Shown in pieces: positions 13,911 to 64,000 of a DNA stretch of 64,000 bases. Position numbers and translations under genes: made by a program. Below the pieces are notes generated by a model. The model made no database searches. It saw only the letters and a program-made list of their open reading frames with translations, and had not been told where the DNA came from. The stretch comes from Phaeosaccion multiseriatum. Its lineage: Eukaryota; Protista; Ochrophyta, other classes. Where the stretch lies: NCBI GenBank assembly GCA_965112735.1, contig OZ218951.1, forward strand, positions 5,828,001-5,892,000, in the 5' to 3' direction. The number at the start of each line of letters is the position of its first letter. Positions within the stretch are counted from its first letter, which is position 1.

Positions 13911-13948
<38 letters not shown>

Positions 13949-17997: not shown

Positions 17998-18032
<35 letters not shown>

Positions 18033-19891: not shown

Positions 19892-22253
19892 ATGGACAAA
19901 GGAGGAGAAGGAACAGAAGGAGCAGCAAGGGAAGCGGACTCCTCAGTGCAGAGGCAGGAGCTCCCTCCTTTCGTGCATGATCTCCACAAAGCCTATATAA
20001 GCAAGGCGAGTCATGCATTGGGATCCAGTCATTGCATCTGCCTCCTCAATCAACTCTGTTTGTAGTCCTTTTCTCTCTGCTCTGTTCGACCCCGCCCCGC
20101 CCCCTTTCTTCTAACCCCCTCTCTCTCTTGCTTCCCGAAGGTGGCCGCGGACACGAGTAGCTTTGAGTTCTCCATGACGGAGCACCTGCGCATGAGCGGC
20201 GTGTACTGGGGCGTGATGGGCATGGCGCTGCTCGGGGCGGACCTGCAGCAGGAGATGAACAAAGGGTGTGTGCGTGTGTGCGTGAGTGCGTGACAGGTCG
20301 GACGGGGGCGAGACGATTTAGGGTGCATTAGAGCAGGGAGAAGACGGGAAAGAGGGGGGGGGGCAGATCAAGGTTAAGCGGGACTGGCGGGTTAAGCGGG
20401 ACTGGGGCTTTAGGAGCCAGATACAGGGTGGCACGAAAGTTGTCGTCGAATCAGCACAGCATCTGTCTGGTCCTTGGCTCATAAGCCTCTGCTGATGCTA
20501 CTGCTACTCCCCTCCTGCCGCTCTCGACCCATGCAATGCTGCACCAGGGGCGAGCTGGTGGCGTGGGTAATGCAGTGCTACGACCCCGAGGGGGGAGGCT
20601 TCTCACCCAACCTAGGCCACGACCCGCACATGCTCTCCACGCTGTCAGCGCTGCAGGTAAGGGGGGGGGATGGCATTGGAAGAAAGGTGGAAATAGACAC
20701 CGCTCAATCTCTCCTCCTCCCTCCTCAGGTGCTCGCCCTCCTCGGGGAGCTTGACCGCGTGGATGCCTCACGTGTGGCGGGCTTCATCGCAGGGCTACAG
20801 CAGGCAGACGGCTCCTTCACGGGGGACAAGTGGGGGGAGGTGGACACACGCTTTTCGTACTGCGCTTTGTCAGCGCTGGCCCTGCTGGGGAGGCTCAGAG
20901 AGCCGGTGAGAGAGAGCGGAGGGGAGGGAGGGAGGGACGACAGATGCACAAATACATGGGGAGAGAGAGGGCGACAGGGGCGGCGTTGCTCTCTTGCCTG
21001 TGGGACAGAGCCTCGGACCGGGGAAGGGGTGGGCTGGACGGGCCGTTTTATCCTTTGCATGTTCCCTCGGTGTGCGTGCCTTCTTTCTCTCCTCCCAGCA
21101 CGTCCACCCGCGCTTCATCGTCCCTCACCCCTTCCCTCCCCTCCCCTCATGCTCCTCCCCCTCCTCCTCCTTCTCCCCCTCCCTTCCCTCCCTTTCACCT
21201 CCCCCTCCCCATGCTCTGCGTAGGGGCTGATCGACGTGGACGCTGCCGCAGAGTTTGTGGGGCGATGCCGGAACTTTGACGGGGGTTTCGGATGCGTGCC
21301 AGGGGCGGAGTCTCACGCGGGGCAGATCTTCACATGCGTGGGGGCCCTCTCCATTGCACAGAGACTCGACCTCGTAGACGAGAAGCTGCTGGGCTGGTGA
21401 GCGAGGAAGGGAGGGAGGGAGGGATGGAGGGAGGAGGGAGGGAGAAAGGAAGGGGTGGGAGGGTGAGGCTGAACTGACCAGGTACCGCCCTCTGGCTTCT
21501 GTCACGCCAACCAGGTGGCTGTGCGAGCGCCAGTGCGACTCCGGCGGTCTGAATGGGCGGCCCGAGAAGCAGGCCGACGTGTGCTACTCGTGGTGGATCC
21601 TCAGCTCTCTGCAGATCCTGGGCAAGGTGGTGAGTGAGTGAGTGAGTGAGTGAGTGAGGTACTACTCTTGGTGGTACCTCCCGTCATTTCGCGCTTCTCG
21701 CTTCTCGCTTCTCGCTTCTACTGTTATACGCAAGTCCTCTCCCATACACACACACCGACCTGCCCACCCCACCCCCTTCCTTTCACTGCCCATAGGACTG
21801 GATCGACACGGCCAAGCTTGTGGAGTTCATCCTGAGGTGTCAGGACTCCGACGACGGGGGTATCGCAGAGCGCCCCGGAAACCTCGCGGACATCTTCCAC
21901 ACCTTCTTCGGTATCGCGGGCCTGTCGCTGCTCGGCCACTTCCAGGGCAAGGAAGAGTGCAGGAGGTACGCACGGATGGTACCCGAAGGACGGCACCCAA
22001 AGGAAGGAGAGGAGCGAGTGGGGTTGTGTTGGGTGGGTGCAGGGCAGCGAGCCCAAGAACCCAAGCATTACCACAGCTTGTCCGTTGATTCGTTCCTCCC
22101 TCCACCTCTGTGACGCCCCTCCATCCCTCCCTCCCTCCCTTCCCCCCTTGCAGCTACCTGGAGGTGGACCCTGCCTACGCGCTGCCCGTGTCTTTGGTGC
22201 AGCAGATGGGCCTCGCCAGTCAGAGCCTGCCCCACGTCCCGCCCTCCCTGTGA
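19892..22253 (+). CDS. RABGGTB: Rab geranylgeranyltransferase type II beta subunit, multi-exon
   Basis: Motifs [75 protein letters not shown] and [14 protein letters not shown]. Confidence 0.95.
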
Positions 22254-34483: not shown

Positions 34484-36891
34484 ATGATGCAGGTATTAAT
34501 ACTCGTCGCTCAATGGTTTCCCGTGCGAGAGCTGTGGGGCGTGTGTAAGGAGCTGGAGCAAGTCACTCCCAGAGGTGTGGTGCTGCCCCTAATCGTGTCT
34601 GTCGCGGGTTGGAGAGTGCAGGCGATGCGCTTCCCTGTCCACCGCGTTCGGGTTGAGACGCGTCGGCTAAGGCTCCTCTTGGCTTTGAAGCCAAAGGCTC
34701 TTGGAGGAAAAGGAAAATGTCCAGGCAAAGGTCAGCAGGAGGGGAAGCCGCCGCATCCAGAAGGCCATCAGGAGGAGGAGCAGCAGCAGGAACGACGTCC
34801 TGGCGTTCTGCGCTCTCCCCCATTGCCGCTGATGCTGGAGACCGTCTTTGCGCACCTCCCCGACCTCCCACAGCTCGAGCTCGGCAGCGCCTTCAACTTG
34901 CCCTTGCCGCACCTTCCGCCGGGGCTGCAGAAGCTCACCTTTGACCCGGTTAGTACTAAGTTGTACGCGTCGCGTCCGTCGTTACCTCCCCTACTGCAAA
35001 GTCTCACACGAGACTAGTGAGTAGTGACGGCATGGTCTATGGTTTAGCTTCGACGCATACCCTCACAGACTGCCTGTACTTCAGCAGTATCGCACTTCCT
35101 CCTAGGCACTAGGCGAAATTGTCTTCTTGAGGAGGTGTTCCTTGTCCCTACTGCTCCGTGTACATCCGCTCCCTCGGACTCGCATGCCACGCGCGTATGC
35201 CTCTCACATGTGTCTCACATGCCCCCCTCTCTTTCCCCCCTCCTCCTTCCCCTTCCTTGCTGCCGCGGGCTCTTGGTTGCCTGCAGACGGCTGCAGGGGT
35301 GTTTAATCATCGCTTGCGCCTGCCACGATCCCTGAGGGCAGTCACTTTCGCGGGTCATTTCGACCAGCCGATTCAGCAGCAGCAGCTGCAGCAGCAGCAG
35401 CAGCAGCCGGAGGAGGAGGAGGAGGAGGAGGGACTCCTGCCTCAGAGCCTCACCAGAGTTGTTTTTGGCTCTGCCTTCGACCAAGCACTGCGCTCTCCTC
35501 TGCCCCCTCTGTTGCAGGAGCTTGTGCTGGGCTTCTCCTTCAACTCACCCCTGCCCGTCCTGCCACACACCCTCAAGAGACTCATCTTCGGCAACAAGTA
35601 CGTGTCTGTCTCTAAGTGTGAGTGCTAGTGTGGTGGCCTTGACCCACATACCCTGATGAGCCCCTCTCCTCCCCTCCCCTGCAGCTTCAACCAACCCAAC
35701 GTGGTGCTCCCTCCCCTTCTGGAGGACGTCAAGTGGGGCTACGACTTCTCGCACCCCGTCCTCCTCCCCCCCAGTCTCAAGCGGTGCGTGTTCGGAGCAC
35801 TTTTCAACGAGCCTTTGGTGCTGCCGGACGGCCTCGAGACCTTGGCCCTGGGGCGGTGCTTCAACCAAGCCCTCCTTGTTGAAGTGCCTGCTGGCCTTGA
35901 GCCAACGCGCGTTGAACCGATTGACCCGAAGCACGCCCCCGGCCGTGGGCTCGTCAAGGCTGGCAGTGAAGCGACCCCCAGGCCTTCATCCTGCAGCACC
36001 CCTCAGAAGGACCCAATCTTGTCAGATGCAAGCAGCAGCACCGTCAGCGCCGCCGCCACTGCCAAGGAGGAGGGGGAGGAGGAGGAGGAAGAGGAGGAGG
36101 AAGAGGAGGAGGGGGAGGGGGAGGAGAGTTGCCAGGGCTGGCAGCAGGCTCGCTCGAGCAGGCAAGGACGGCGCCCCCTCGTGCCCGGGGGGGGGGCGGG
36201 ATCAGGCTCTGCACGCAGCTCCCTCGTGGCCGGGATGCCTCGCTCCCTGCGGAAACTTGTCTGTGGCCACCGCATGGATGGGGAGCAGCTGCATCTACAC
36301 CACCCTACGCCCAGCGGCACCACCATCACCAGTTGGTCGTCCAGGAGCATTAGTAGCAACAGAAGTGTGAGTGGGGCAATAATGAGTAGCAGCACGGGAA
36401 GAGGCGAGAAGAACGGCGATAGTGGTACCCCCCCGCAGCAGTTGGTGGTACAGCAGCCGGAGGGGCTGGAGGAGCTCGTGCTGGGGTATGGGTTCTCGCG
36501 GAGCCGCCCTCTCCTGTTGCCGCCCAGCTTGAAATGGATCACCGTCGTGGTGAGGCCCCAGGAGGACGAACCCCCCCCCCCTCCTCCTCCTCCTCCTTCT
36601 GTTGCTGCTGCTCATGCCGCTGGGGACATGCATGACGGCGCTGGTGGGCAAGGCGGAGGGGGGGGCGAAGGTGTGCATTTGGATGGTGGTGTTGGCGGGG
36701 GGGGCGGCGGCTTTCCCATGGAGAGGCTCTGGGGTTTGGTGCGGCAGGGAGCGCTCGACGGCGAAATTGTTGCCCGCGGTCCGCCCCTGGGGAGCAATGC
36801 GGGGGGCAAGTGGAGGCTGCCCTTGCTGCCCCTGGCTCAGAGGAAGGCACTGAGTGGACAGAGTGGACAGAGTGGGGCGGTGCTCCTGTGA
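34484..36891 (+). CDS. Second FNIP-repeat protein (3 exons)
   Basis: Repeats LELGSAFNLPLPHLPPGLQKLTF, VVFGSAFDQAL, LVLGFSFNSPLPVLPHTLKRLIFG and FGALFNEPLVLPDGLETLALGRCFNQAL. Confidence 0.8.
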
Positions 36892-38259
36892 AGTGGTGCG
36901 ACAGAGCGGAGCGCATGGCGGTACAGTATAGTAGGAGGGAGAGCCAAGCTGGGGGAGAGGTGTGGGGGGGGAGAGGGGGCATGAGGCGGGCCGACGCACA
37001 CCAGGCGGAGGGCAGCGAGGGGAGGCAGGAGGGGGCGATCAAGAGGCCAGACCAACCCCCCACCCCTCATGGAGGGTTTCGGACCTTTGTGGTGCGGTTG
37101 GCTGAGTACCCGCTAGCTCAACCGCCCGCCCCTCTGCTTTGGATCGTCGCTCCTCCATACCGCAATGTCGGCAGCTGCGAGGCCCGGGCGAGAGGGTGGG
37201 CATTATTCCCTGCTTTAGACCGTCGCTCATCTTACATGTACACATGTCATCACGATGTTGCCCGAAAGGGTCCGGGCGAGGCGTTGGGCAGTAATTTTGG
37301 ATAGAAATAAAGAAATTAGCCAATAATTGGCTTATTCGACCGAGGGTGAAAGCGAGTTTCGTTTGCCTTTTTTTCAACAACAACAAACACACGAGAGAAA
37401 ACCAAGAGCTTACCTGCAGAGAAACTGTCCACAGCAACAGAAGAGGCAGCAGTAGCGACAGAGGGGGAGTGTCACTGGAGCGGAGTTTGCAGCACCAGGC
37501 TAACACAAGGTGGGGTTAGAAGCGCAATTGCAACAGTCACTTGGTTGGGCGAGGAAGGGGGCCGAGTGCAGCGGTACTGCGTAGAAGACGGCCGGGAAGT
37601 TCGAAGTAGTGGCAGTAGGGATGTTGCTGATCAAAGCATGAGGTTCTTGTGCCGACGCAGGTCGATAGGGAGGAGGTGTTCGCTACAATGAACTGGAAGC
37701 CCCACAACCCTCCCCCCCCCTTTAGCTGTGTCAATCCGTCATAGCGGACAAATGGGTCTCAGGGAAGGGGAGCATGCGTATTAGGAGAAGGTTGACGCCA
37801 GAAGGAGAGAGAGGGTGGAAGGTGGTGTCTCTGCCCGGGCGCGCGGCAATGTAGGCCGCATGTTCGAGGCAACAGTCAACATCTCTGGAGTTGGTTAGGA
37901 CGGACTTTGTTGTTTCGATTCAAGCGGTGCAAAGGCCCCTTTTTGAAGGGATTGGCCGATACAGCCTCGAGATGCTCGAGTGTCTGTATATCAGTGGCGA
38001 CGACTTGCAGGCTCGTTTGGTTTGGCATGTAACGTCAGTCAGCCATGTGGTTGTTATTCTCCCCCCCCTCTCAGTTCTCTTACACATCTTCCTCTTGCTT
38101 GCCTCTCATGGGCACTGCCCGCAACAGGAAGGCAAAGGAATCAGTGCAGCAGCTGATTGGAGAAAAGAGAGGGAAGAGGGGGAGAGAGTAGGCCTGAGTG
38201 CTAGGCGAAGAGAGAGACACACACGGAGAGACAACAGACTGAGAGAGAGAGAGGGCACG

Positions 38260-41200
38260 ATGGTGAAGAAGGTGGGCAAGTATGAGATCGGCAAGACCAT
38301 CGGGGAGGGTACCTTCGGCAAGGTGAAGATGGCAGTCAATACGGAGACGGGGGAGCGCGTGGCCATCAAGGTGCTGGACAAGAGCATCATTCAGAAGCAG
38401 AACATGGGCGCACAGGTGCGGTAGGAAGGGAAGAGAAGAGGTATATGGGCGTAAAAGCAAATGGAATAGGCAGGGAGGAGGGCTGGCAGTGGATGGCAGT
38501 GCATGGCAGTGGATTGGGGGGCTTGCGTGGTGCCACTCAGGGTCGGCTCTGCTCTGCGCTCCATGCAAGGAAGGGCCCAGTTGGAAGGGCCAAAATGGCG
38601 AGAGGGGACCAGGCTAGGCGGGCAGCCCCTGAGGCCTTGAACTCATCTCTCCCCCTTTCAGGCCTCACGCACTTGTCCGCCCGCCCCGTTGCCATACGCC
38701 TTCTGCCTTCTCTCATCTCTCCCCCTTTCCCCTGCCCCTGCCCCTGTCTGCCTCCCCCCTCAGGTCAAGCGCGAGATTTCCATCATGAAACTCGTGCGGC
38801 ACAAGTACGTTGTTCAATTGAAGGAGGTGCTGGCCAGCAGCAGCAAGATCTTCCTCGTGTGCCAGCTCATCACAGGGGGGGAGCTCTTCGACAAGATTGT
38901 GGAGAAGCAGGTGGGTGGGGAGGGGGGGAAGTGTGGAGCTGCGCGCAGGGTAGAGGTGTCTGGGTGGGGCAGGGTAGAGGTATACGGTAGGGCCGTGGGT
39001 GGACAGCCGTGCGTGTTTGCGTCTCTGTCCTCTCTGTTCTCTGCCGTATGCGCTGGCTCTGTGCTGGCCTTTTCTTGTCCCCTACTCCTCCCTTCCTCTT
39101 GTCACTCACCATGCTGTGCGGTGTCGTATCACCAATCGTTGTCCTGTCCTGTGCTGTGCTCTGCTATGCTGCAGCGCTTTACGGAGGACGAGGCCCGCTT
39201 CTACTTCCGCCAGATCGTGTGCGGCGTGCAGTACTGCCACATGAAGGGCGTCTGCCACAGAGACCTCAAGGTGCAGGGGTGGCAGTCTATGAGGAGGGGG
39301 GGGTGGCACTGGACGGGGAGGGGTGAGGTGGAGGAGGATGGCACTGGACGAGACCGAGGAGGAGGGGAGCAGGGGAGCAGGGGGAGGAGAGTACTATGTT
39401 CCATCTGATACCAACTCACCCCTGCCCTCTGCCTTTGTGCCTGCTCTGCATCCCTCTGTCTGTATGCCGCTCTACATCCCTGTCCATGTACCTCTGCCCC
39501 GCCTACCTGCCCAGCCCGAGAACATCCTTTTGGACGGCGGCGGCAACGTGAAGATCAGCGACTTTGGGCTGTCCAACCTCTACTCGGGGGGAGACGACGA
39601 GGCCCTCAAGCTGCTGCACACCACCTGCGGTGAGTCAGTCAGCCCATAGGCCGGACAGGCGTATGGGCAGGCAGGAGGGCAAGTAGGGAGGGGGGGAGGG
39701 AGGGAGGAGAGAGAAGAGAGGGAGGGAGGCCAGGAAGAAGTCAGGCAGGTAGGCAGACAGACAGACAGACAGACAGACAGACAGGCAGGCAGACAGTCTC
39801 ATGACTTGGGCTTCTCTCGTTCGCTCATTCCAGCCTCACGCACGCACGCACTCTCTCTCTCCTCCCCCACCCTCCATGACCCACTCACTCACTACCACCA
39901 CCCGCTCACTCGCTCACTCACTCACTCACTCACTCACTACCACCACCCGCTCACTCACTCACTCACTCACTCACTACCACCACCCGCTCACTCACTCACT
40001 CACTCACTCACTATCACCACCCGCTCACTCACGTGTGCCCACCCACTCAGGCACACCCAACTACGTTGCCCCTGAGGTGCTTGCGGACAAGGGCTACGAG
40101 GGCACTTTGGCCGACGTGTGGAGCATGGGGGTGATCTTGTACGTGCTGCTGGCAGGCTTCCTCCCCTTCGACGAACCCTCCATGTCCACCCTCTTTCGGA
40201 AGATCCAGGCCGCCGAGTTCTCCTACCCGCGTTGGTTCTCCGACGATGTGCGCAGCCTGATCGACGCCATCTTGGTGCCCGACCCCAAGCTTCGCATGAA
40301 CATCGATCAGGTCAAGAGCCACGCCTGGTACCTTGTGGGGGATCCCCCTGAGGACCCGCAGGACGGAGCGGATACGGGAACGGCGGGGGGAGAGAAGGGG
40401 GCGGAGGGCGCAGAGGGAGCAGAGGGAGCGGTGCAGGGGGAGCCCACGGCCATGCAGATGGAGAACGCCGTGCAGGTGAGAGTGCGGTGAGGGACAGGGG
40501 GGGGGGGGCAGTTTGAGTTTGGGTTGAGGTGGGTGGGTGGCTGATGGGTGGGTGGGAATGGCTCTCGACGTGTCTAAGAGGCCCCTTGGCTCCCAATCGT
40601 GTTGTCACATTCTCTTGTATCACTCTTGGACTTGCTTCACATTAACTTGGACTACACACACACTTTTGGTTAGTTTCGTACTCAGTTGGACTATACTTGT
40701 TTTGCGTAGTGTGGAGGCAACCAAACCTGCCTTATGCCCCGCCTTATTGCCTTATGTCAATCAAAGCCAAAGCGTACACTACTACTTCGTATCCGCACTC
40801 ACTCGCGCCAACGCTGCACACCGCACCCCAACTCCAACCACGATGGTACCCAACCACTTACAGGAGGGCGTGGAGGCGGAGAAGATGGAGGTGGACACCC
40901 CTGCGGCCCCGCCAACTGTGACCGGCATGCAGAGCATCAACGCGGCAGGCAAGCGCGGCTCCGTGCGGCTCAACACCTTCGAGACGCTGCTGCCCGCTTC
41001 GGACATCCTTACCAAGGTGGGTGGGCCGTTCATTGACTTGTGGTGCTGAGGAGGAGAACCGAAGGCAGAAGCGTTGCTTCACTCTCTGGGAAGAGCTGCT
41101 GGAGAAAAGGCACATAGGCAGGCGTGCGGGTACATGGGTAGGTTGGCATACGCAGACACTGACACTGAAACTGGACCTGCGACTGCAACAGGTGGGCGAC

Positions 41201-53647: not shown

Positions 53648-54870
53648 GTACGGGGTGGATGGCTGCCGCGAACATTAGGGGCCCTTCCGGTGCTCCTTGG
53701 TTGACTCCCGAGCTCTGGTAGATGGTGCGGGTGCCTTCTGGGGGTGAGGGCGTTCTGGGCTGCCGCGTGGGTCATGTTGGCTATGGCGTAGTTGATGCCT
53801 CCCGGGTCGATGGTGGAAAATGCTCCTGGTGCGAGGACGCCTCTGGCACGCGATACCTTGGTGTATGCCTTGGAGATGTCCTGCAGCACGACGGTTCTGC
53901 CGGCGTCGTGTGCCAGCTGGGCTGCTGCTGCGTGGATTTCACCTCCTCCCCTGACTGCGACCACCAGCTGCCCCGCGGCTCTGAGCTGTGGTGGCAGTGG
54001 GGTGCTCCCCGTGTGCATGAGCTCGTAGGTGTCGGTCAATGCCTCCACGCGGCTCAAGCGTCGCGCCGGACCAGTGCTCCCCCTCCTCGGCCGAGAGGGA
54101 GAGAAAAGGGCCCCTGGTTCACCTGGTGGGCCCCCAGAGACACACGCACACGGTCGTACATACATACACACCCACACACACCCTTTACAGTTCTTTTATG
54201 CCTCCTAGAAGTCAGTGAAGCCCCCCCACTGTGGGGTAGGCCACTCGTTCATGCCATATCGGAAACCCGAGGCAGACGTTAATTAATTCACTCTCGTTCT
54301 ATCCATAAAGCTTTGGCGTCTATCTCTCCCGCCAGGTGGTGGGGAGTACACAGACAAAGAGTGTGAGTCACAGTTAGCGAAGGTTCACTGACGCTACAGA
54401 TCACTCACTGGTGGAGTACAAAAAGAAACCTGGTTTATGCAGCGTCCGAACTACTAAACCGTATCAAGTCTGATCGGACAAACTCTTGATACTCGCCGAG
54501 CTTACGACACTCTTTACGAAGATCCAACTATACTTTGCAACCGTACACCCTCCTGATCGAGCACCCAAAACTCTGCCTGAGTGATTCGTAGCTCCTGGCC
54601 ATAGAATCCCCTCGTAACACCACTTGCTTGTTTATTAATCTAGGCGCTAGCTACTCACGCAACAGCGGGCCGCATGTATTGCCCGGCGACGCCTGGCTCC
54701 TCTCCCCCTTGCTTCGCTAAACGGATTCGAGCACCCACCAGCCACACTATCGCTGCCAGTCCGCACGAGAACTGCCAACGTCTAGAAAGTACAGCACTTT
54801 GAATCGAGAAGAACACCCCTGCCTTTCCCCTTTGATTGGCAGCACCTGCCACTCTGCTTCACCTGTCCTC

Positions 54871-55058
54871 GCGAGCACTCACCTACTACTACTACATTTT
54901 GAATGAAAAACAACCCCCCCCCTCAATTGGCAGCACCCACTACCCATGACCACCCCTCAATTGGCACCACCCACTACTCAGTGTTCGCGAGCACTCCCGA
55001 CCTACTACTACTACATTTTGAATGGAAAACACCCCCCCCCCCTCAATTGGTAGCACCC
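54871..55058. repeat. Degenerate tandem duplication (about 116-bp period)
   Basis: gcgagcactc..cctactactactacattttgaatg.aaaac..ccccctcaattgg.agcaccc occurs twice. Confidence 0.8.
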
Positions 55059-55175
55059 ATCCCTCTGCTTCACCAGTCCTCGCCGAGCACTCCCAACTCT
55101 ACAGCAAAACGAATCGAGAAAACACACCCGCCCTCTCCCCTCCCACCCCACCTTTCCACTCCAAGGCTTCTCTAC

Positions 55176-58100
55176 TCAAGAGCGGCGCGCGGGGAAGGCA
55201 GTCCCCCAAGGCCCATCCACGATGTAATCCTCGTCGTGCACAGACTTCAGGATGGCGTCGCGCCCCTTGAGGGCCTGGCCAGTAGCGGGGTCGAACTTGA
55301 GGGTCTGCGTCTCGCCAAGCACCCCGCTCCACTCCTCCACGCCTTCGTCGTTGGGGGACAGCATCATCACGGCGTCGACGACGTGGGCGTGGCAGCGCTC
55401 CACCTCCTGACGATAATCGATCTGGAACGCGTAGGTGGCCGTCGTGATGTAAACGGACGCCCAGCTGCCGGGCGAGTCGAAGAGGTCACGGTAAATACGC
55501 TTTTCCGCGATCCAGGCCGAGCACGCTTCGCGGTCCTCCATCCTGTGGAGACGAGCCTCCAGGACATCCAGAACACGGAGGTCGGCGGTGATGGCAAATT
55601 CTTCTTCGCTGAGCCGACGAGCACGAGGCTGGACTGTCGCACGCAGCTCCTCCTCCTCCTCCTTCAGCCGGTGCATCATGTGGACATCTCGCTTGGTCTG
55701 GCAGGTTCCAACGATATTGAAAGCCGTGACCGAGTCGCCGTTCTCGAACATGTACTCCCCAGGGGTGGTGATGGTCTCGCCGTTGATGCTCATCTCGAGG
55801 GAGCCCTCGCCGAGGCACACGCCGCCCTCTCCCGCGGGGCACCCGGGGTTGTAGTTGCCCACGTCCTTCACGCCGACTTCAATCTCATAATCGGCGAAGG
55901 TGAAGGCATGCTTCGTGACGTAAGTCTGTAGAGAGGCCGCGAGCAGAGCAGATGCAGCCGGCAGAGCGAGGCGGTGCACAACGTCGACAAGAGAAAGCAT
56001 CGTCAGTGAGATGAATCGGAACCGTCCCACGTGACAAGGAGAACATGGAAGAGACTTGACCTCCTCGCCGTCACTCACCGGCATGAGGCCATCCTCGCAC
56101 TCCTCGAAGACATGGAGGAGCCAGTTCCACTGCAGGTGGTCTTCGGCAAGGGCGGCGAACCACTTGGCGTTGAGGCCCTTGAACAGAAAGCTTTGGCCCT
56201 TGAGGCCCGTCACCACGGGATCGCTGTTGACGCCGACGGTAGCACATACGAGCACACCGCTCGACACGCTGAGGAAAGGCGGGAGAGCGACGTGGATCGA
56301 CCGGGGAAGGAAGAGATTGCAATTGGGAATGAGCTTCCATCTCAGCACGGAATGCCCGTGGATGGATAGGCGTGGCCCGGCGGGCGGCGTGTGTCACTCG
56401 ACAGAGAAAGGGGCGCCAAAAGGCTCAACTGTGGCCTGGCTGCGGAGGGTGTTAATACACGTACACTTACCACCCATCACCGGAGCAGCAGGCGGCCTCA
56501 AGCCCATCAGCAGCTTGGGCAAACTGTGCACCCTGTTGTGCACGCGAGAGGAGGGGCCAGTGCCATAGGGAAAGGAGGACGGGGCATTGCGTGCGTCAGC
56601 AGTCGACAGCCGGGGAAGACACACACCACCGAAAGGGGGGGGGCGGGGATCTGCCTGCGGCAGTGCAGCCCATGTAAAGTGTGTCAGCGCTCCGCTACTA
56701 GCTGCTACCACCTACCACACAGGAGTTGGGTCCAGTGCACAGTGCCGCGGTTCCAGGGCCAAAATCCGCGTCCTGCAAGAGGTGGGACGTGAAGGGAGGA
56801 GGATATGGGGTCTCAGTCAGAGAAGTAGAGCAACCTTAGATAGTGAAAGCAGAACCAGGCCATTGCGGGGTGAGCAGTAGCAGCTGCGAAAGGCATACAG
56901 GTGTGGGATCATCATGGTTGCCAGTGGGAAGCAGTGCACCAGGCCCGCCCCTGCTGATAGAGCGGGCGGGGAGAGCCAAACGGGGTGGCTGCAACGCGTG
57001 GATGCATCATTGTCTCAGCGCTCAAGCCTGTGTGCTGCCACCACGTACCTCACATGAGCCGTCTCCAGTGCACTCTATGGTGGTCGGGGAGTCACCAGTG
57101 ACACCTTGAAGTTTCTGTAAGGCAGAGGCAGGTGGTGGGACGGGAATAAAGGGAGGGATTGTGGTGTTTAGAGAAGCAGCCAGAGCATTCTATGAGAGTA
57201 AAAGCAAGCAGCACCGACGCGATCGAAAGTAGCGCAGAAGAAGTCAGAGTGAGGTGTGTAGCTAGCCAGTCTATCATGGCCTGCCTCTCAAGGCGAGCCG
57301 CCACACAAGAGCGCGGCCGGCCAGCGGTAGCGATACTCGAGTGCAAGGAGATGCCTGGTAGAAGAAATATACTTGCGTCCATCTTCCTTACGGCGCAGGC
57401 GGAAACACCTTCGCACTTACCCTCGTGCCTTCGGGTACTATTGCGGCTGAATCTCTCGAAACTGTGATGCCCTGTTCAAGAGCAGAGAGAGAACAGAGCA
57501 AGCAAAAGACGATGGAGCAAGGAAAGAGAAGGGAGAGCATCATATGCTTGCGAAAGCGGTAGTACATACGATCTGAAGCGAAGCCAAGACGTTGGCAGGG
57601 AGATGCGTTGGCTGGCCAGCCCGTCTATCATGTTGTGCCTCTCAATGACACGAGACCGGCCATGCAATTTGCAAGTCCAGCCATGCAACTTGCAAGGACA
57701 CGGTGGCAGACTGACTCAAGTGCTTAGCTATAGGAAAAGTACACATGCTGTCCATAATCATTCTGCATTTTGCTTACCAGGCAGGATCGCAATCCAATGC
57801 AGACTATCAGTGACCCAGATTCAATCACAGCCTTCTGTTCGAATGCACGCAGGCAGGGGAAGTGTGCACCAGTGGGGCAACAAGAGGTGGCCAGTGGTGG
57901 GACGCGAAGAAAAGGAGGATGCTGGGCGTGAGTCTCCGAGAAAAGAAAGTAGAAAGAAAGAGAATGCAGTAGCTAGCTACCATGTGATTTATCACTAATC
58001 AAGTAGTAAAGCGTAAGGAGAGGTCAGAGGTGAGCGTGTGTTGGGCCAGTATATCATGATCTGCCTCTCAATACGAGCCGCCATGGCACTGCCAGCCAGA

Positions 58101-61100
58101 GCCCGGCGGCAGGCTGACTCAAGGGGAAGCAGATGCCTAGTAGAAGAAGTACACTGGAAGAAGTACTTACCTGGCAGGTTAATTCACCTGCGCATATCCC
58201 ACTTGAGCCGCTGAAAACAGCAAACTGTTCGAATGCACGCAGGCAGGAGTGCACCAGTAGAGCATCAAGAGGTGGCCAGTCGGACGTGAAGAAAAGGAGG
58301 ATACTGGGCGTGAGTCTCCGAGAAAAAGCAGCAGAAAACGTCAGGGACGAAAGCCGTATCACATAATCTACTAAGGTAGACGAAGAGAGGTCAGAACCAG
58401 GCCATTGCGGGGTGAGCAGTAGCAGCTGCGAAAGGTATACAGGTGTGGGATCATCATGGTTGCCAGTGGGAAGCAGTCCACCAGGCCCGCCCCTGCTGAT
58501 AGAGCGGGCGGGGAGAGCCAAACGGGGTGGCTGCAGCGCGTGGATGCATCATTGTCTCAGCGCTCAAGCCCATGTGCTGCCACCACGTACCGCACATGAG
58601 CTGTCTCCAGTGCACGCTGCGGTGGTCCGGGAGACACCAGTGACATCTTGAAGTTTCTGCAAGGCAGAGGCATGTGGTGGGATGGGGGAGGGATTGTGGG
58701 GTTTAGAGAAGCAGCCAGAGCATTCTATGAGAGTAAAAGCAAGCAGCACCGACGCGATCGAAAGTAGCGCAGAAGAGGTCAGAGTGAGGTGTGTAGCTAG
58801 CCAGTTTATCATGGCCTGCCTCTCAAGGCGAGCCGCCACACACGCAAGAGCGTGGCCGGCCAGCGGTAGCGTTACTCGAGTGCAAGGAGATGCCTGGTGG
58901 AAGAAATATACTTGCGTCCATCTTCCTTACGGCGCAGGCGGAAACACCTTCGCACGTACCCTCGTTCCTTCGAGTACTATTGCTGAATCTCTCGAAACTT
59001 TGATGCCCTGTTCAAATGTGCCACAGGAGTGCAGAGAGAGAACAGAGCAAGCAAAAGACGACGGAGCAAGGAAAGAGAAGGGAGAGCATCATATGCTTGA
59101 GAAAGCGGTAGTACCATACGATCTGAAGCGAAGCCAAGACGTTAGGAGGGAGATGCGTTGGCTGGCCAGCCCGTCGATCATGTTGTGCCTCTCAATGACA
59201 TGAGACCCGCCATGCAATTTGCAAGCCCAGCCATGCAACTTGATTGCAAGGACCCAGTGGCAGACTGACTCAAGTGCATAGCTATAGAAAAAGTACCCAT
59301 GCTGTCCACAATCATTCTGTATCTTACAATGCAGGCAAGATGACCCTCGCAGACTATCAGTGACCCAGATTCAATCACAGCGTCCTGTTCGAATGCACGC
59401 AGGCAGGGGAAGTGTACACCAGTGGGGCGACAAGAGGAGGCCAGTGGTGGGACGTGAAGGAGGATGCTGGGCGTGAGTCTCCGAGAAAATAAAAGTAGAA
59501 AGAAAGAGAAAGTAGTAGGGACCATGTGATCTATCACTAATCAAGTAGTAAGGCGTAAGGAGAGGTCAGAGGTGAGTGTGTGTTGGGCCAGTACATCATG
59601 ATCTGCCTCTCAAAACGACCCGCCATGCAAGCAAGAGCCCGACGGCAGGCTCACTCAAGGGGAGGCAGATGCCTAGTAGAAGAAGTACATGATGTGATAA
59701 ATCGATGTCGACATTAGATATCGATGTCATATCGCTGGTACAAGTCCGTTCACTCCTCTAATAGCGGTATGTAGCTAATAAGACGCTTTCCCACAAACCC
59801 GAGCAAGTGCTCCACTGGTCTCTAGAAGAGAGATATCCCAACAGTACATTGGAAGAAGTACTTACCCCGCAGGAAGATTCACCGCATGTCCCCGTTGAGC
59901 CACTGAAAACAGCAAACTGTGTGCACACACGCAGGCAGGAGTGCACCAGTGGAGCATCAAGAGGTGGCCAGTCGGACGTGAAGAAAAGGAGGATACTGGG
60001 CGTGAGTCGTCGAGAAAAAGCAGCAGAAAACGTCGGTGACGAAAGCCGTATCACGTCATCTACTAAGAAGGTACTAGACGAAGAGGTCAGAGGTGAGTGT
60101 GTGTTAGGCCAGTCTATCATGATCTGCCTCTCGATACGAGCCGCCACGCCAGAGCCCGGCGGCAGGCTGACTCAAGGGGAAGCAGATGCCTAGCAGAAGA
60201 AGTACATTGGAAGAAGCACTTACGTCGCAGGAATTTTCACCTGTGCATGTCCCCGTTGAGCCGCCGCTGAAACCCGCCTCCTGTGTGCACACACGCAGGC
60301 AGGAGTGCACCAGCGGAGCATCAAGAGGCGGCCAGTCGGACGTGAAGAAAAGGAGGATGCTGGGCGTGAGCCTTCGAGAAAAAGCAGCAGAAAACGTCAG
60401 TGACGAAAGCCGTATCACGTCTTCTACTAAGAAGGTAGCTAGACGAAGAGGCCAGAGGTGACGTGTGTGTTGGGCCAGTATATCATGATCTGCCTCTCAA
60501 TACGACCCGCCATGCAAGCAAGAGCCCGACGGCAGGCTGACTCAAGGGGAAGCAGATGCCTAGTAGAAGTACATTGGAAGAAGTACTTACCTGGCAGGAA
60601 TTTTCACCTGTGCATGTCCCCGTTGAGCCGCCGCTGAAACCGGCCTCCTGTGTGCACACACGCAGGCAGGAGTGCACCAGTGGAGCATCAAGAGGCGGCC
60701 AGTCGGACGTGAAGAAAAGGAGGATGCTGGGCGTGAGCCTTCGAGAAAAAGCAGCAGAAAACGTCAGTGACGAAAGCCGTATCACGTCTTCTACTAAGAA
60801 GGTAGCTAGACGAAGAGGCCAGAGGTGACGTGTGTGTTGGGCCAGTATATCATGATCTGCCTCTCAATACGACCCGCCATGCAAGCAAGAGCCCGACGGC
60901 AGGCTGACTCAAGGGGAAGCAGATGCCTAGTAGAAGGACATTGGAAGAAGTACTTACCAGGCAGGAAAATTCACCAGTGCATGTCCCCGTTGAGCCACTG
61001 AAACCGGCCTCCTGTGTGCACACATGCAGGCAGGAGTGCACCAGTGGAGCATCAAGAGGCGGCCAGTCGGACGTGAAGAAAAGGAGGATGCTGGGCGTGA

Positions 61101-63826
61101 GTCTTCGAGAAAAAGCAGCAGAAAACGTCAGTGACGAAAGCGTATCACGTCATCTACTAAGAAGGTAGCTAGACGAAGAGGTCAGAGGTGACGTGTGTGT
61201 TGGGCCAGTATATCATGATCTGCCTCTCAATACGACCCGCCATGCAAGCAAGAGCCCGACGGCAGGCTGACTCAAGGGGAAGAGGATGCCTAGCAGAAGA
61301 AGTACATTGGAAAAGTACTTACGTCGCAGGTTAATTCACCTGCGCATATCCCACTTGAGCCGCCGCTGAAACCGGCCTCCTGTGTGCACACACGCAGGCA
61401 GGAGTGCGCCAGTGGAGCATCAAGAGGCGGCCGGTCGGACGTGAAGAAAAGGAGGATGCTGGAGCGTGCGTCTTCGAGAAAGCGCAGCAGAAAACGTCAG
61501 TGACGAAAGCCGTCTCACTTCATCTAGCTACTAAGAAGGTAGACGAAGAGAGGTCAGAGGTGAGGTGTGTGTTGGGCCAATATATCATGATCTGCCTCTC
61601 AATACGACCCGCCATGCAAGCAAGAGCCCGACGGCAGGCTGACTCAAGGGGAAGCAGATGCCTAGTAGAAGGACATTGGAAGAAGTACTTACCTTGCAGG
61701 ACAATACACCTGTGCATGTCCCCGTTGAGCCGCCGCTGAAAATGGCCCCCTGTGTGCACACACGCAGGCAGGTGTGCACCAGTGGAGCATCAAGAGGCGG
61801 CCAGTCGGGCGTGAAGAAAAGGAGGATGCTGGGCGTGAGTCTTCGAGAAAAAGCAGCAGAAAACGTCGGTGACGAAGCCGTATCACGTCATCTAGCTACT
61901 AAGAAGGTAGACGAAGAGAGCTCAGAGGTGAGCGTGTGTTGGGCCAGACTATCATGATTTGCCTCTCAATACGAGCCACCATGCAAGAACCCGGCGGCAG
62001 GCTGACGAGAGGCAGATCCTTGCGTAGATGGTAGAAGAAGTATATCACGTGAAGTATATGGTGCTCATCTTCCTCTATCTTACCGAGCAGGTACGGTCGT
62101 TACCATCGCAGTCCACCTGTGAGCCTTCGAACTTGGATGGGTTTCCCGGTTCAGACTGTGGCAGGGTTAGCACGCAGGCAGGCAGGAGTGCACCAGCGGA
62201 GCAACAAGAGGTGGTCAGCGGGACGTGAAGAAAGGGAGGATGCAGGGCGTGAGTCTCCAAGCACTACTACAAAGTCAGTGAAAGCCGTTCCACCCATCCA
62301 CGAAGGCCGAAGAGAGGTCAGAGATGGGGAGTCTTAGAAGAAGTACATGCATCTCCGTCTTCCTTACCTGGCAGGACCCTACACCAATGCAACCAACCAC
62401 TGAATCGAGAGACATGATGCCCTGTTCAAATGCAAGCAGCAGGAGTGCAAGTGGAGCAAGAGGTGGCCAGAGGGACGTGAAGAAAGTGACGATGCAGGGC
62501 GTGAGTCTCCAAGCACTATAAAGTAAGTGAAAGCCGTTCCACCCATCCACGAAGGCCGAAGAGACGTCAGAGGTGGGGTAGTCTTAGTAGAAGAAGTACA
62601 TGCATGTCCGCCTTCCTTACCAGGCAGGATTGTGGACCAGTGCAAGCGCTGACACCGGCTGTCTGTGTGTTGGAGACACTGGCTCTCTGTGCGCACGCAG
62701 GCAGGCAGGAGTGCACCAGTGGAGCAACAAGAGGTGACCAGAGGGACGTGAAGAAGGGGAGGATGCAGGGCGTGAGTCTCCAAGCACTACTACAAAGTCA
62801 GTCAAAGCCGTTCCACCCACCCACAAAGGCCGAAGAGAGGTCAGAGGTGGGGTAGTCTTAGTAGAAGAAGTACATGCAGCCATGTCCGTCTTCCTTACCT
62901 CGCAGGAACCTGGACCAACGCAAAGCAGATCTGAATCGTCAGACGTGATGTCCTGTTCAAATGCACGCAGCAGGAGTACAAGTGGAGCAAGAGGTGGCCA
63001 GAGGGACGAAAAGAAAGGGAGGATGCAGGGCGTGAGTCTCCAAGCACTATAAACACCCGTCGGTGAAAGCCGTTCCACCCATCCACGAAGGCCGAAGAGA
63101 GGTCAGAGGTGGGGTAGTCTTAGTAGAAGAAGTATATGCATGTCCGTCTTCCTTACCTCGCAGGAATCTGGACCACGGCAAACCACATCTGAAGCGGTAG
63201 ACGTGATGTCCTGTTCAAATGCAAGCAGCAGGAGTACAAGTGGAGCAAGAGGTGGCCAGACGCGAAGAAAAGGAGGATGTTGGGCCTGAGTCTCCGAGAG
63301 AAAGCAGCACACTATGTGAGTAAAAGCCGTACGACGCGAACTACTACTATCATGATCTGCCTCTCAAGGCGATCCGCCATGATTCACTCCCCCCCCCTCT
63401 TTTCCTTCCGTACCGAGCAGGAATCTGATGCGGAGCATTCCGCCCTTGATTGCGAGGTCAACTCAACACCCTGTGTGCAAGCAGGCAGGCAGTTGTGCAC
63501 CAGAGGAGCAACAAGAGGAGGCCAGAGGGACGTGAAGAAAAGGAGCATGCAGGGCGTGAGTCTCCGAGAAAACGAACTTTAAACACGAAGTGAAAGCCGA
63601 ACCAGAGATTGGTGTACTGTGGGGAAGAGTGTACTGTGGGGAAGAGTGGTCAGAGGTGAGGTGTGTGTTACGGTGTCTCCGGGGTGTCGCTCCCCTGACG
63701 GGGGCGAACGGCAGCTTGACTCAAGGGGAAGCAGATGCTTATAACTAGGCTGTTGTCCGCCTTTCTTACCGGGCAGGCGTCCGCAGCAGCGCAGAGCGCA
63801 GTTGCATCCGAGTCAAACGTGGAGTC
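55176..63826 (-). CDS. Cys-repeat cassette-exon protein with VWD-like C-terminal domain (5' end outside the window)
   Basis: 21 cassette exons are followed by cap exon 56471-56532 (phase 0-2), exon 56079-56268 (CVSSG..NSDPVVTGLKGQSFLFKG..WFA) and terminal exon 55176-55925 (..GVLGET). Phases join in frame, using internal donors for the two frameshifted cassettes. Confidence 0.82.
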
Positions 63827-63900
63827 CTGTTCAAAGGCACGCAGTAGGAGCGAAAGCAAGTGGAGCAACAAGTTTTTGGATGTGAACAAAAGGAGCAGGA
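56716..63900 (-). repeat. Tandem array of exon+intron units (period mostly about 255-390 bp) with a 1.54-kb higher-order duplication
   Basis: Recurrent intron blocks include gcaggagtgcaccagtggagcatcaagagg, gggcgtgagtctccgagaaaa and tatcatgatctgcctctcaa. About 56851-58150 matches about 58393-59690. Confidence 0.95.
59691..59842. mobile_element. 152-bp insertion with 7-bp target-site duplication (AGTACAT)
   Basis: Sibling introns read gaagtacattggaag. Here agtacat occurs at both 59684-59690 and 59843-59849 around unrelated sequence. Confidence 0.8.
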
Positions 63901-64000
63901 GACTCAGGGCGAGAAGCCAAGCAGTAGACTACTGGCAGCCGGTATGAGCGAGAGCGAAAGCACTACCGGGCGATCTAAAGCAGATGTGCCGCTCAGTACG

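What the first reader, a model, noticed from the sequence alone, without database searches (positions are those of the whole stretch)
55176..63826. Hidden cassette-exon array: at least 21 micro-exons encoding variable Cys repeats, spliced to a constant VWD-like domain
Seen in sequence: each satellite-like unit holds one CAG|exon|GTA segment on the - strand. In transcript order: 63770-63826 DSTFDSDATALCAAADACP; 63414-63470 GVELTSQSRAECSASDSCS; 63157-63210 DITSTASDVVCRGPDSCE; 62899-62952 DITSDDSDLLCVGPGSCE; 62621-62686 RASVSNTQTAGVSACTGPQSCL; 62368-62421 GIMSLDSVVGCIGVGSCQ; 62084-62155 SEPGNPSKFEGSQVDCDGNDRTCS; 61693-61749 GAIFSGGSTGTCTGVLSCK; 61323-61379 EAGFSGGSSGICAGELTCD; 60958-61011 EAGFSGSTGTCTGEFSCL; 60591-60647 EAGFSGGSTGTCTGENSCQ; 60224-60280 EAGFSGGSTGTCTGENSCD; 59866-59916 FAVFSGSTGTCGESSCG; 59328-59384 DAVIESGSLIVCEGHLACI; 58931-59007 (frameshifted); 58591-58656 KLQDVTGVSRTTAACTGDSSCA; 58171-58224 FAVFSGSSGICAGELTCQ; 57778-57834 KAVIESGSLIVCIGLRSCL; 57392-57471 (frameshifted); 57049-57114 KLQGVTGDSPTTIECTGDGSCE; 56716-56772 DADFGPGTAALCTGPNSCV. 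Nineteen are multiples of 3, stop-free and phase 0-0, so any subset or order stays in frame. Established knowledge: one-repeat-per-exon shuffling is known for the LRR (ROCO) and TPR (NB-ARC) genes of Ectocarpus. Inference: this is an analogous system built on a different repeat (CxGxxSC, probably a disulfide-stapled beta-solenoid) in an extracellular or wall protein, possibly for recognition or adhesion. I do not know of a description of it.
Basis: partly seen in the sequence, partly recalled or inferred. Interest (0 to 1): 0.95.

Follow-up and report, generated by a model that had tools for sequence, protein, structure and literature searches.

The report
Algal gene with one-repeat-per-exon array
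This is a real gene of an unidentified stramenopile alga in which at least 21 tiny exons each encode one two-cysteine repeat joined to a von Willebrand D-like domain, and the exons have diverged two to four times faster than the introns between them, so the repeat surface is being diversified, though whether splicing mixes the exons is untested.

Summary
All 21 CAG|exon|GTA segments are at the stated coordinates on the minus strand.

- **Frame:** the exon frame has 0 stops in 401 codons, against 13 and 15 in the other two frames.
- **Indels:** all 6 exon indels are multiples of 3, against 7 of 37 in introns.
- **Cysteines:** both are invariant in all 19 Cys-type exons.
- **The two "frameshifted" exons:** each has an internal GT donor giving a 48- or 51-nt in-frame exon. 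With these donors the whole model is 24 exons, 2205 nt and 734 codons without a stop. It runs off the window at its 5' end.
- **C-terminal domain:** it has 86 relatives, from diatoms wherever a source organism is recorded. No Pfam family matches, but the fold matches VWF and mucin D assemblies.
- **Array origin:** nested tandem duplications of 258 bp, 367 bp and about 1.55 kb.
- **Divergence:** exons differ more than their introns (pi 0.12-0.45 against 0.03-0.19), and dN and dS both exceed intron divergence.
- **Mosaic exon:** exon 17 joins the start of exon 13 to the body of exon 9.

I read this as an exon-per-repeat gene evolving by duplication, gene conversion and diversifying selection. 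It resembles the brown-algal ROCO LRR genes in design but is not a member of that family. Cassette splicing is arithmetically possible and untested. The repeat matched nothing in the limited searches I could run.

The parts
63827..64000 (-). Partial intron upstream of exon 1. Base 63999 begins GTACTGAG, a likely donor, so the gene continues beyond the window. A micro-inverted copy of the conserved intron motif lies at 63898-63918.
63770..63826 (-). micro-exon 1, 57 nt, phase 0-0, Cys repeat
63414..63470 (-). micro-exon 2, 57 nt, Cys repeat
63157..63210 (-). micro-exon 3, 54 nt, Cys repeat (258-bp unit family)
62899..62952 (-). micro-exon 4, 54 nt, Cys repeat (258-bp family)
62621..62686 (-). 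micro-exon 5, 66 nt, Cys repeat (258-bp family)
62368..62421 (-). micro-exon 6, 54 nt, Cys repeat (258-bp family)
62084..62155 (-). micro-exon 7, 72 nt, Cys repeat (258-bp family)
61693..61749 (-). micro-exon 8, 57 nt, Cys repeat (367-bp unit family)
61323..61379 (-). micro-exon 9, 57 nt, Cys repeat (367-bp family). Its body matches that of exon 17, so it is the likely donor of that sequence.
60958..61011 (-). micro-exon 10, 54 nt, Cys repeat (367-bp family)
60591..60647 (-). micro-exon 11, 57 nt, Cys repeat (367-bp family)
60224..60280 (-). micro-exon 12, 57 nt, Cys repeat (367-bp family)
59866..59916 (-). micro-exon 13, 51 nt, Cys repeat. First exon of the duplicated four-exon super-unit (13-16 matching 17-20).
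59328..59384 (-). micro-exon 14, 57 nt, Cys repeat
58960..59007 (-). micro-exon 15, 48 nt with the internal donor GTACGTGC, no Cys.
58591..58656 (-). micro-exon 16, 66 nt, Cys repeat
58171..58224 (-). micro-exon 17, 54 nt, Cys repeat. Mosaic: the first 14 nt match exon 13 and the rest is identical to exon 9.
57778..57834 (-). micro-exon 18, 57 nt, Cys repeat
57421..57471 (-). micro-exon 19, 51 nt with the internal donor GTAAGTGC, no Cys. The distal donor at 57392 gives 80 nt and a premature stop in exon 20.
57049..57114 (-). micro-exon 20, 66 nt, Cys repeat
56716..56772 (-). micro-exon 21, 57 nt, Cys repeat
56471..56532 (-). exon 22, 62 nt (phase 0 to 2). Encodes a degenerate last repeat.
56079..56268 (-). 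exon 23, 190 nt. Start of the VWD-like domain, with the invariant Asp-Pro.
55926..56078 (-). Intron of 153 nt, in frame and stop-free, but absent from all homologues. This confirms the splice.
55176..55925 (-). Last exon, 750 nt including the stop. Holds the rest of the VWD-like domain.
57272..63564 (-). Span holding the conserved intron blocks. TTGAGAGGCAGATCATGATA occurs in 13 introns and GAGACTCACGCCCWGCATCCTCC in 14. The last ~110 nt of most introns are conserved. Neither motif occurs elsewhere in the window.

Best explanation
This is one protein-coding gene of an ochrophyte (photosynthetic stramenopile) alga, cut off at its 5' end by the window.

Product. It is a modular protein, most likely secreted or on the cell surface. 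It has at least 21 repeats of 16-24 residues, with consensus xAxFSxGSxxxCxGxxSCx and two invariant Cys. A degenerate last repeat follows, then a C-terminal VWD-fold domain of a family recorded only from diatoms wherever a source organism is named. Each repeat sits on its own phase 0-0 micro-exon.

How the array evolved (shown). It grew by tandem duplication of exon-plus-intron units: about 258 bp x 4-5, 367 bp x 6, and a four-exon unit of about 1.55 kb x 2. Units still exchange sequence, as the mosaic exon 17 shows.

Inference from the divergence pattern. Recombination or gene conversion keeps the introns alike. The exons stay different because change on the repeat surface is favoured, while the Cys, Gly and Ser framework is held. 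This gives the protein a variable binding or adhesive surface and a copy number that can change without breaking the frame.

Not shown. Whether the exons are also used as splicing cassettes.
For: Coding:
- No stop in 401 codons of the exon frame, against 13 and 15 in the other frames.
- Exon indels are multiples of 3 in 6 of 6 cases, intron indels in 7 of 37, p = 2.8e-4.
- The two Cys are the only invariant columns in the 19 Cys-type exons.
- Every boundary has a canonical splice site.
- The spliced model is in frame through to a domain with 86 homologues.
- The 55926-56078 intron is confirmed by its absence from homologues.

Duplication.

Exons diverge faster than introns:
- Pairwise examples: 46% exon against 88% intron identity, and 94.7% against 99.4%.
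- dN is 2.5-11 times intron K in 16 of 20 pairs, and dS is usually higher than K as well.
- Sliding-window pi peaks on the exon: 0.135 against 0.052, 0.45 against 0.19, 0.19 against 0.09, and 0.12 against 0.03.
- Exon changes are transversion-rich, p = 0.0014, and spread evenly over the three codon positions.

Exchange between units: exon 17 has the 5' end of exon 13 and the body of exon 9, 3.2 kb away, while its introns are not specially like those of unit 9.

Extracellular setting: homologues carry subtilase, gametolysin M11, FG-GAP, CBM_4_9 and chitin-binding modules upstream of the same domain.

VWD fold.
Against: - No transcript evidence of any kind.
- The 5' end, and so any signal peptide, is outside the window.
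- Micro-exon GC3 is 0.55, equal to intron GC (0.54). The last exon of the same gene has GC3 0.81. So the micro-exons lack this genome's coding bias.
- dN/dS is near 1 rather than clearly above it. Relaxed constraint everywhere except the Cys, Gly and Ser positions, combined with intron conservation for another reason, would give the same numbers.
- No homologue carries these repeats, so no independent copy supports the repeat part.
- No related locus turned up in metagenomes.
Confidence: 0.75

Rival explanations
1. The micro-exons are cassettes, and regulated skipping or selective inclusion makes many isoforms from one gene, as reported for the LRR exons of Ectocarpus ROCO genes and, in mutually exclusive form, for Dscam. 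This can hold together with the best explanation.
For: - All exons are phase 0-0, so any subset stays in frame. Skipping exons 15 and 19 keeps the ORF.
- Exons 15 and 19 each have two competing donors 29 nt apart, one productive and one leading to a premature stop.
- Intron blocks are conserved beyond what duplication age explains.
- The first intron carries a 9-11 nt complement of a motif present in 14 downstream introns.
- There is precedent for alternative splicing of such arrays (PMC11378527).
Against: - No expression data.
- Every exon has a strong CAG acceptor, a long pyrimidine tract and a near-consensus donor, as constitutive exons do.
- The complementarity is short and seen only once. 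No covariation or stable structure was found in the introns, and no Rfam family matched.
Confidence: 0.25
2. The array is a non-coding satellite, or a decayed pseudo-array, lying upstream of a shorter VWD-domain gene. On this view the open frame is a by-product of repetition.
For: - Micro-exon GC3 equals intron GC.
- dN is about equal to dS.
- Two units carry a 20-23 nt internal duplication that breaks the original frame.
- No homologue has the repeats.
Against: - Only one frame is open: 0 stops against 13 and 15.
- Exon indels are all multiples of 3, unlike intron indels.
- Cys codons are invariant amid 15-55% divergence.
- Six different exon lengths are all divisible by 3.
- Splice sites are kept at all 42 boundaries.
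- Both broken units keep an in-frame rescue donor.
- Exons 22 and 23 contain no Met, so no start codon separates the array from the domain.
Confidence: 0.05
3. The exon-intron contrast comes from constraint on the introns rather than from selection for exon diversity. On this view the introns hold elements needed to recognise 48-72 nt exons (enhancers, branch sites, pairing segments), and the exons drift almost neutrally apart from the Cys, Gly and Ser framework.
For: - A block of 16-20 nt is invariant in 13 introns, including the most diverged ones. The last ~110 nt are conserved across repeat families whose exons share only 30-45% of residues.
- dN/dS is near 1.
- The Cys-less exon pair 15/19 shows no significant excess.
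Against: - Conservation covers whole introns (97-99% between units 10-12), not only motifs.
- Exon dS also exceeds intron K.
- The exon substitution spectrum differs from that of the introns.
- The mosaic exon 17 shows that sequence is exchanged between units.
Confidence: 0.3

Closest known systems
Exon-shuffled LRR (ROCO) and TPR (NB-ARC) genes of brown algae (Zambounis et al. 2012, PMC3341825; Teng et al. 2024, PMC11378527)
   Same: - One repeat per short symmetrical exon, in long tandem arrays.
- Fast exon turnover and signs of diversifying selection.
- Proposed to widen binding specificity.
- Found in a stramenopile alga.
   Different: - The repeat here is a two-Cys unit of about 19 residues, not LRR or TPR.
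- Exon length varies (48-72 nt) instead of a fixed 72 nt.
- The constant part is an extracellular-type VWD fold, not a ROC-COR GTPase or NB-ARC domain, so the protein is probably outside the cell rather than a cytosolic receptor.
- No orphan or inverted exons were seen in the window.
- The organism is not a brown alga.
- In Ectocarpus such shuffling was reported as essentially restricted to LRR and TPR loci.
[quoted passage not shown] 2019, as cited in bioRxiv 10.1101/2023.03.06.531300)
   Same: - The fold matches VWF, MUC2, MUC5AC, MUC5B and FCGBP D assemblies, and RGMB more weakly.
- An Asp-Pro at the start of the domain is invariant in the 44-sequence alignment.
- It occurs in secreted modular proteins.
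   Different: - No Pfam VWD or RGM_C hit for the window protein.
- The motif is GDP followed by Leu, Ile, Val or Thr (NSDPVV in the window protein), not GDPH.
- Twelve homologues carry a true GDPH motif elsewhere in the same protein, so the two modules are distinct.
- Autocleavage cannot be assumed.
Classical exon-per-repeat genes such as fibrillar collagens with 54-bp exons (own knowledge)
   Same: Arrays of short phase 0-0 exons made by unequal crossing-over, with repeat number free to change in frame.
   Different: Collagen exons are conserved structural units. Here the exons are the fastest-evolving part of the locus.
Accelerated-evolution genes with conserved introns: snake venom PLA2 genes, conotoxin genes, and MHC class I introns homogenised within loci
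   Same: Coding segments diverge faster than the neighbouring introns, and synonymous sites diverge faster too.
   Different: Those cases compare paralogous genes or alleles. Here the contrast is between tandem units inside one gene.
Disulfide-braced beta-helical antifreeze protein of Tenebrio molitor (own knowledge)
   Same: Short tandem repeats with a C-x5-C spacing in each repeat. Some exons read T-C-T.
   Different: - The repeat is 19 residues, not 12.
- The repeat profile gave no significant match to PDB sequences (best E 4.5, a dehydratase).
- The fold was not predicted here, so the resemblance is only a lead.

Membership tests
Brown-algal exon-shuffled ROCO / NB-ARC receptor genes | One repeat per symmetrical exon in a tandem array | tested here: met
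   21 micro-exons, all divisible by 3 and all phase 0-0
Brown-algal exon-shuffled ROCO / NB-ARC receptor genes | The repeat is an LRR (72-nt exon) or a TPR | tested here: not met
   Consensus is xAxFSxGSxxxCxGxxSCx and exons are 48-72 nt. The four exons long enough to scan had no Pfam match.
Brown-algal exon-shuffled ROCO / NB-ARC receptor genes | ROC-COR GTPase or NB-ARC signalling domain next to the repeats | tested here: not met
   The constant part is a VWD-fold domain. The part upstream of the window is unknown.
Brown-algal exon-shuffled ROCO / NB-ARC receptor genes | Diversifying selection on the repeat exons | tested here: inconclusive
   Exon dN and dS both exceed intron K, and pi peaks on the exons. 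But dN/dS is about 1, and no codon-site models were run.
Brown-algal exon-shuffled ROCO / NB-ARC receptor genes | Alternative splicing of the repeat exons | not testable with these tools
   No transcript data. No close relative of this gene's C-terminal exon in the protein collection (best 39% identity).
VWD domain (Pfam PF00094 / PROSITE VWFD) | Sequence match to the family profile | tested here: not met
   No Pfam hit for the window protein. One homologue is named VWFD by UniRef. Another region of that homologue hits RGM_C weakly.
VWD domain (Pfam PF00094 / PROSITE VWFD) | VWD fold | tested here: met
   Homologue model with pLDDT 85.7: the 19 best PDB matches are VWF, MUC2, MUC5AC, MUC5B and FCGBP D assemblies and Cypridina luciferase, prob 0.90-1.00, best E 8e-4. 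The window's own model (pLDDT 77.9, intron-encoded loop included) gives the same best hit but with E 0.095.
VWD domain (Pfam PF00094 / PROSITE VWFD) | GDPH autocleavage motif | tested here: not met
   Asp-Pro is invariant, but the next residue is Leu, Ile, Val or Thr. The window protein reads NSDPVV.
Diatom GDPH-domain adhesive proteins | Homology to the GDPH domain of the Amphora trail proteins | not tested
GDPH motifs occur elsewhere in 12 of the 86 homologues.

The most novel reading that the evidence does not exclude
The locus is a dedicated diversity generator for a secreted recognition or adhesion protein in an alga. On this reading the near-identical introns are not passive. They would act as substrates for frequent unequal recombination or gene conversion, and through the conserved blocks and the complementary segment in the first intron they would direct combinatorial inclusion of hypervariable repeat exons. 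One gene would then yield many surface variants between clones or even between cells.
Probability: 0.15. Interest if true: 0.85.

Novelty: new variant of a known kind. Interest (0 to 1): 0.55.

Why it matters
Exon-per-repeat arrays under diversification are the only candidates so far for variable receptors in stramenopile algae. They are known for intracellular LRR and TPR proteins of brown algae.

This locus would extend the principle in three ways:
- to a different repeat, a two-Cys unit of about 19 residues with no match in the limited family and PDB-sequence searches run here;
- to a probably extracellular protein with a VWD-fold domain;
- to a lineage outside the brown algae.

It also gives an unusually clean internal control, because each exon can be compared with its own flanking introns. 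That makes selection, gene conversion and splicing hypotheses directly testable with RNA-seq and a few resequenced strains.

Tried and rejected
1. Large-database search and structure prediction for the spliced repeat region were not done.
2. As a substitute I searched a profile of the 19 exon peptides against PDB sequences. The best E was 4.5, which is chance.
3. Pfam could be run on only the four exons of at least 20 residues. It found nothing.
4. Pfam on the C-terminal exons gave nothing above noise.
5. A sequence profile of the C-terminal family against PDB gave only chance hits to Fab chains.
6. Metagenome scans with the C-terminal exon and with the 23-nt intron motif found no related locus.
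7. Rfam on 55000-64000 at E <= 1 found nothing.
8. A consensus fold of the conserved intron block over 13 introns gave a 6-bp stem with no compensatory change, so I dropped the idea of a structured RNA or snoRNA.
9. Introner or transposon origin of the introns: the motifs occur only inside the array in this window.
10. Adenine-targeted (DGR-like) mutagenesis: exon differences involve all four bases.
11. Other CxGxx[STA]C clusters in the window: only 5 scattered single matches outside the array.
12. Organism: the best named hits are a pelagophyte (57%, BEACH) and brown algae, Tribonema, Nannochloropsis and Chrysoparadoxa (50-59%, RabGGT-beta). This places it among ochrophytes and no more precisely.
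13. Two literature searches for a described equivalent found none.

Full report
**1. The observation**

Each is followed by GTAAG (16 cases), GTACG (4) or GTAGG (1).

Tandem Repeats Finder reports a 367-bp unit x 5.9 at 91% identity and a 258-bp unit x 4.2 at 80%. A direct-repeat search adds a duplication with 1535-1692 bp spacing, which makes exons 13-16 paralogous to exons 17-20.

**2. Are the segments coding?**

Four independent tests say yes.
- The exon frame has no stop in 401 codons, while the other two frames have 13 and 15. At the intron stop frequency of 3.4% per codon, P is about 9e-7. On a non-redundant subset of 215 codons P is 6e-4.
- Every indel between related exons is a multiple of 3 (6 of 6), against 7 of 37 in the introns (p = 2.8e-4). 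Six different exon lengths occur (48, 51, 54, 57, 66, 72), all divisible by 3.
- In an alignment of the 19 Cys-type exon peptides the two Cys are the only invariant columns. The consensus is xAxFSxGSxxxCxGxxSCx.
- The array is in frame with a downstream domain that has real homologues (section 4).

One observation points the other way. The micro-exons have GC3 0.55, the same as intron GC (0.54), whereas the last exon of the same gene has GC3 0.81. I take this as a sign of fast turnover, not of non-coding status, but it is recorded as evidence against.

**3. The two 'frameshifted' exons**

With these donors the exons are 48 nt (58960-59007) and 51 nt (57421-57471). They are phase 0-0 and encode a Cys-less 16- or 17-residue unit whose first 14 residues still align with the neighbouring repeat type.

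By eye, each looks like a canonical 57-nt repeat exon with a 20- or 23-nt internal duplication that also supplied the new donor.

The consequences for the reading frame are as follows.
- With the proximal donors, the 24-exon model is 2205 nt and 734 codons, with its only stop at the end.
- With either distal donor, a premature stop appears in exon 17 or exon 20.
- Skipping both exons also keeps the frame.

**4. The constant part**

Exons 56471-56532 (62 nt), 56079-56268 (190 nt) and 55176-55925 complete the gene.

The last exon finds 86 representatives among 1.8 billion proteins, with a best identity of 39% and no closer relative. Those with a recorded source organism are diatoms: Thalassionema, Stephanopyxis and Odontella. 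UniRef names the Odontella protein 'VWFD domain-containing'.

Aligning the read-through of exon 23, the intron and exon 24 with homologues shows the 51 intron-encoded residues as an insertion that no homologue has. This confirms that splice.

Sequence searches did not place the domain. Pfam has no family for it, and a family profile finds nothing in PDB by sequence.

Fold comparison did.
- The AlphaFold model of the window protein (pLDDT 77.9, intron loop included) has VWF D1-A1 as its best PDB match, but weakly: prob 0.94, E 0.095.
- A model of the homologue P0004 (pLDDT 85.7) has VWF, MUC2, MUC5AC, MUC5B and FCGBP D assemblies and Cypridina luciferase as its 19 best matches, with prob 0.90-1.00 and a best E of 8e-4. 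RGMB follows.

So 'VWD-like' is supported at the level of fold.

An Asp-Pro at the start of the domain is invariant in the 44-sequence alignment. The motif is GDP followed by Leu, Ile, Val or Thr, and NSDPVV in the window protein, not GDPH. Twelve homologues carry a true GDPH motif 250-350 residues upstream. The diatom 'GDPH domain' of adhesive trail proteins (bioRxiv 10.1101/2023.03.06.531300; PMC8027222) is therefore probably a neighbouring but distinct module.

Upstream of this domain, homologues carry subtilase, gametolysin M11, FG-GAP, CBM_4_9 or chitin-binding modules. These are extracellular contexts. None carries the Cys repeats.

**5. Exons diverge faster than introns**

This is the most unusual result. 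The evidence is as follows.
- Pairwise identity between units is lower in exons than in introns. Units 4 and 5 show 46% against 88%, units 4 and 6 show 72% against 94.5%, and units 11 and 12 show 94.7% against 99.4%.
- By Nei-Gojobori counts, dN is 2.5-11 times the intron divergence in 16 of 20 pairs. dS is also usually higher than intron K, and dN/dS is around 1.
- Sliding-window diversity peaks on the exon in five of six unit sets:

| Unit set | pi, exon | pi, intron |
|---|---|---|
| 367-bp family (units 9-12) | 0.135 | 0.052 |
| 258-bp family (units 4-7) | 0.45 | 0.19 |
| Exons 14 / 18 | 0.19 | 0.09 |
| Exons 16 / 20 | 0.12 | 0.03 |
| Cys-less exons 15 / 19 | 0.06 | 0.03 (not significant) |

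- Exon differences are spread evenly over codon positions (22, 23, 17). They are transversion-rich (22 ts to 49 tv) compared with the introns (78 to 66), p = 0.0014.
- Exon 17 is a mosaic. Its first 14 nt match exon 13 and the rest is identical to exon 9, 3.2 kb away. Its flanking introns are not specially close to those of unit 9.

The simplest reading is that the units exchange sequence, which keeps the introns alike, while exchanges or homogenisation that would erase exon differences are not retained. Synonymous sites would then hitch-hike with the selected differences.

Constraint on the introns themselves is a serious partial alternative. A block of 16-20 nt (TTGAGAGGCA..CATGAT) is invariant in 13 introns. 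The last ~110 nt are conserved even between families whose exons share only 30-45% of residues.

**6. What could not be shown**

- *Expression.* There are no transcript data. No close relative of this gene's C-terminal exon is in the protein collection, and no related locus is in the metagenome collection. Cassette use therefore rests only on phase arithmetic.
- *Hints of regulated splicing.* There are two: the competing donors in exons 15 and 19, and a 9-11 nt complement of the intron motif GGAGACTCA in the first visible intron. The second is short and occurs only once.
- *Intron RNA.* The introns show no Rfam family and no covarying structure.
- *The repeat itself.* I could not fold the repeat region or search it against the large protein collections, because the spliced sequence has no reference. 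The solenoid and disulfide-staple idea remains an inference from the period of about 19 residues and the C-x5-C spacing.

**7. Organism and context**

The window is eukaryotic and 52-66% G+C. It also carries a BEACH-domain gene, a RabGGT-beta exon and an FNIP-repeat plus kinase gene.

The best named relatives are a pelagophyte (57%) and brown algae, Tribonema, Nannochloropsis and Chrysoparadoxa (50-59%). So it is an ochrophyte without a close sequenced relative in the collection, and not a brown alga.

**8. Comparison and verdict**

The design matches the brown-algal ROCO and NB-ARC arrays: one repeat per symmetrical exon, rapid exon turnover and proposed recognition diversity.

The locus fails two defining features of that family. 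The repeat is not LRR or TPR, and the partner domain is not ROC-COR or NB-ARC.

In Ectocarpus such shuffling was reported as essentially restricted to LRR and TPR loci. I therefore rate this a new variant of a known kind.

The gene and its architecture are well supported. Diversifying evolution is supported but not proven. Combinatorial splicing is open.

Noticed in passing
window 63898-63918 (- strand transcript, intron upstream of exon 1): The conserved intron motif GGAGACTCA appears here as a micro-inversion, reading CCCTGAGTCTCC on the transcript. It is 9-11 nt complementary to the motif in 14 downstream introns. This resembles a docking/selector arrangement, but it is short and occurs only once.
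   Followed up: partly
window 57272-63367, 13 introns: The block TTGAGAGGCA..CATGAT is invariant even in the most diverged introns. It has no Rfam match and no covarying structure. Its function is unknown.
   Followed up: partly
window approx 59690-59845 (intron 14): An insertion of about 150 nt that the paralogous intron 18 lacks. By eye it includes short palindromic ATCGAT/GATATC stretches. It may be a small mobile element.
   Followed up: no
window 56716-63826 versus 55176-55925: Micro-exon GC3 is 0.55, equal to intron GC, but the last exon of the same gene has GC3 0.81 and the neighbouring BEACH ORF has 0.70.
   Followed up: partly
window 58931-59007 and 57392-57471: Both exons carry two donors 29 nt apart. 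The proximal one keeps the frame. The distal one leads to a premature stop two exons (exon 15) or one exon (exon 19) further on. This could be an unproductive-splicing switch.
   Followed up: partly
homologues P0026, P0028, P0037, P0041, P0043, P0045, P0054-P0057, P0079, P0080: These 12 homologues carry a true GDPH motif, usually 250-350 residues upstream of the GDP[LIV]-type domain. So two VWD-like modules can sit in one protein.
   Followed up: partly
window 54870-55130: Direct repeats of about 120 bp with G-runs and (GTA)n lie just downstream of the stop codon, in the 3' flank or UTR.
   Followed up: no
window 13412-18817 (-), 20474-21223 (+), 35656-40490 (+): Neighbouring genes: a BEACH-domain protein, a RabGGT-beta (prenyltransferase) exon, and an FNIP-repeat ORF followed by protein kinase exons.
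   Followed up: partly
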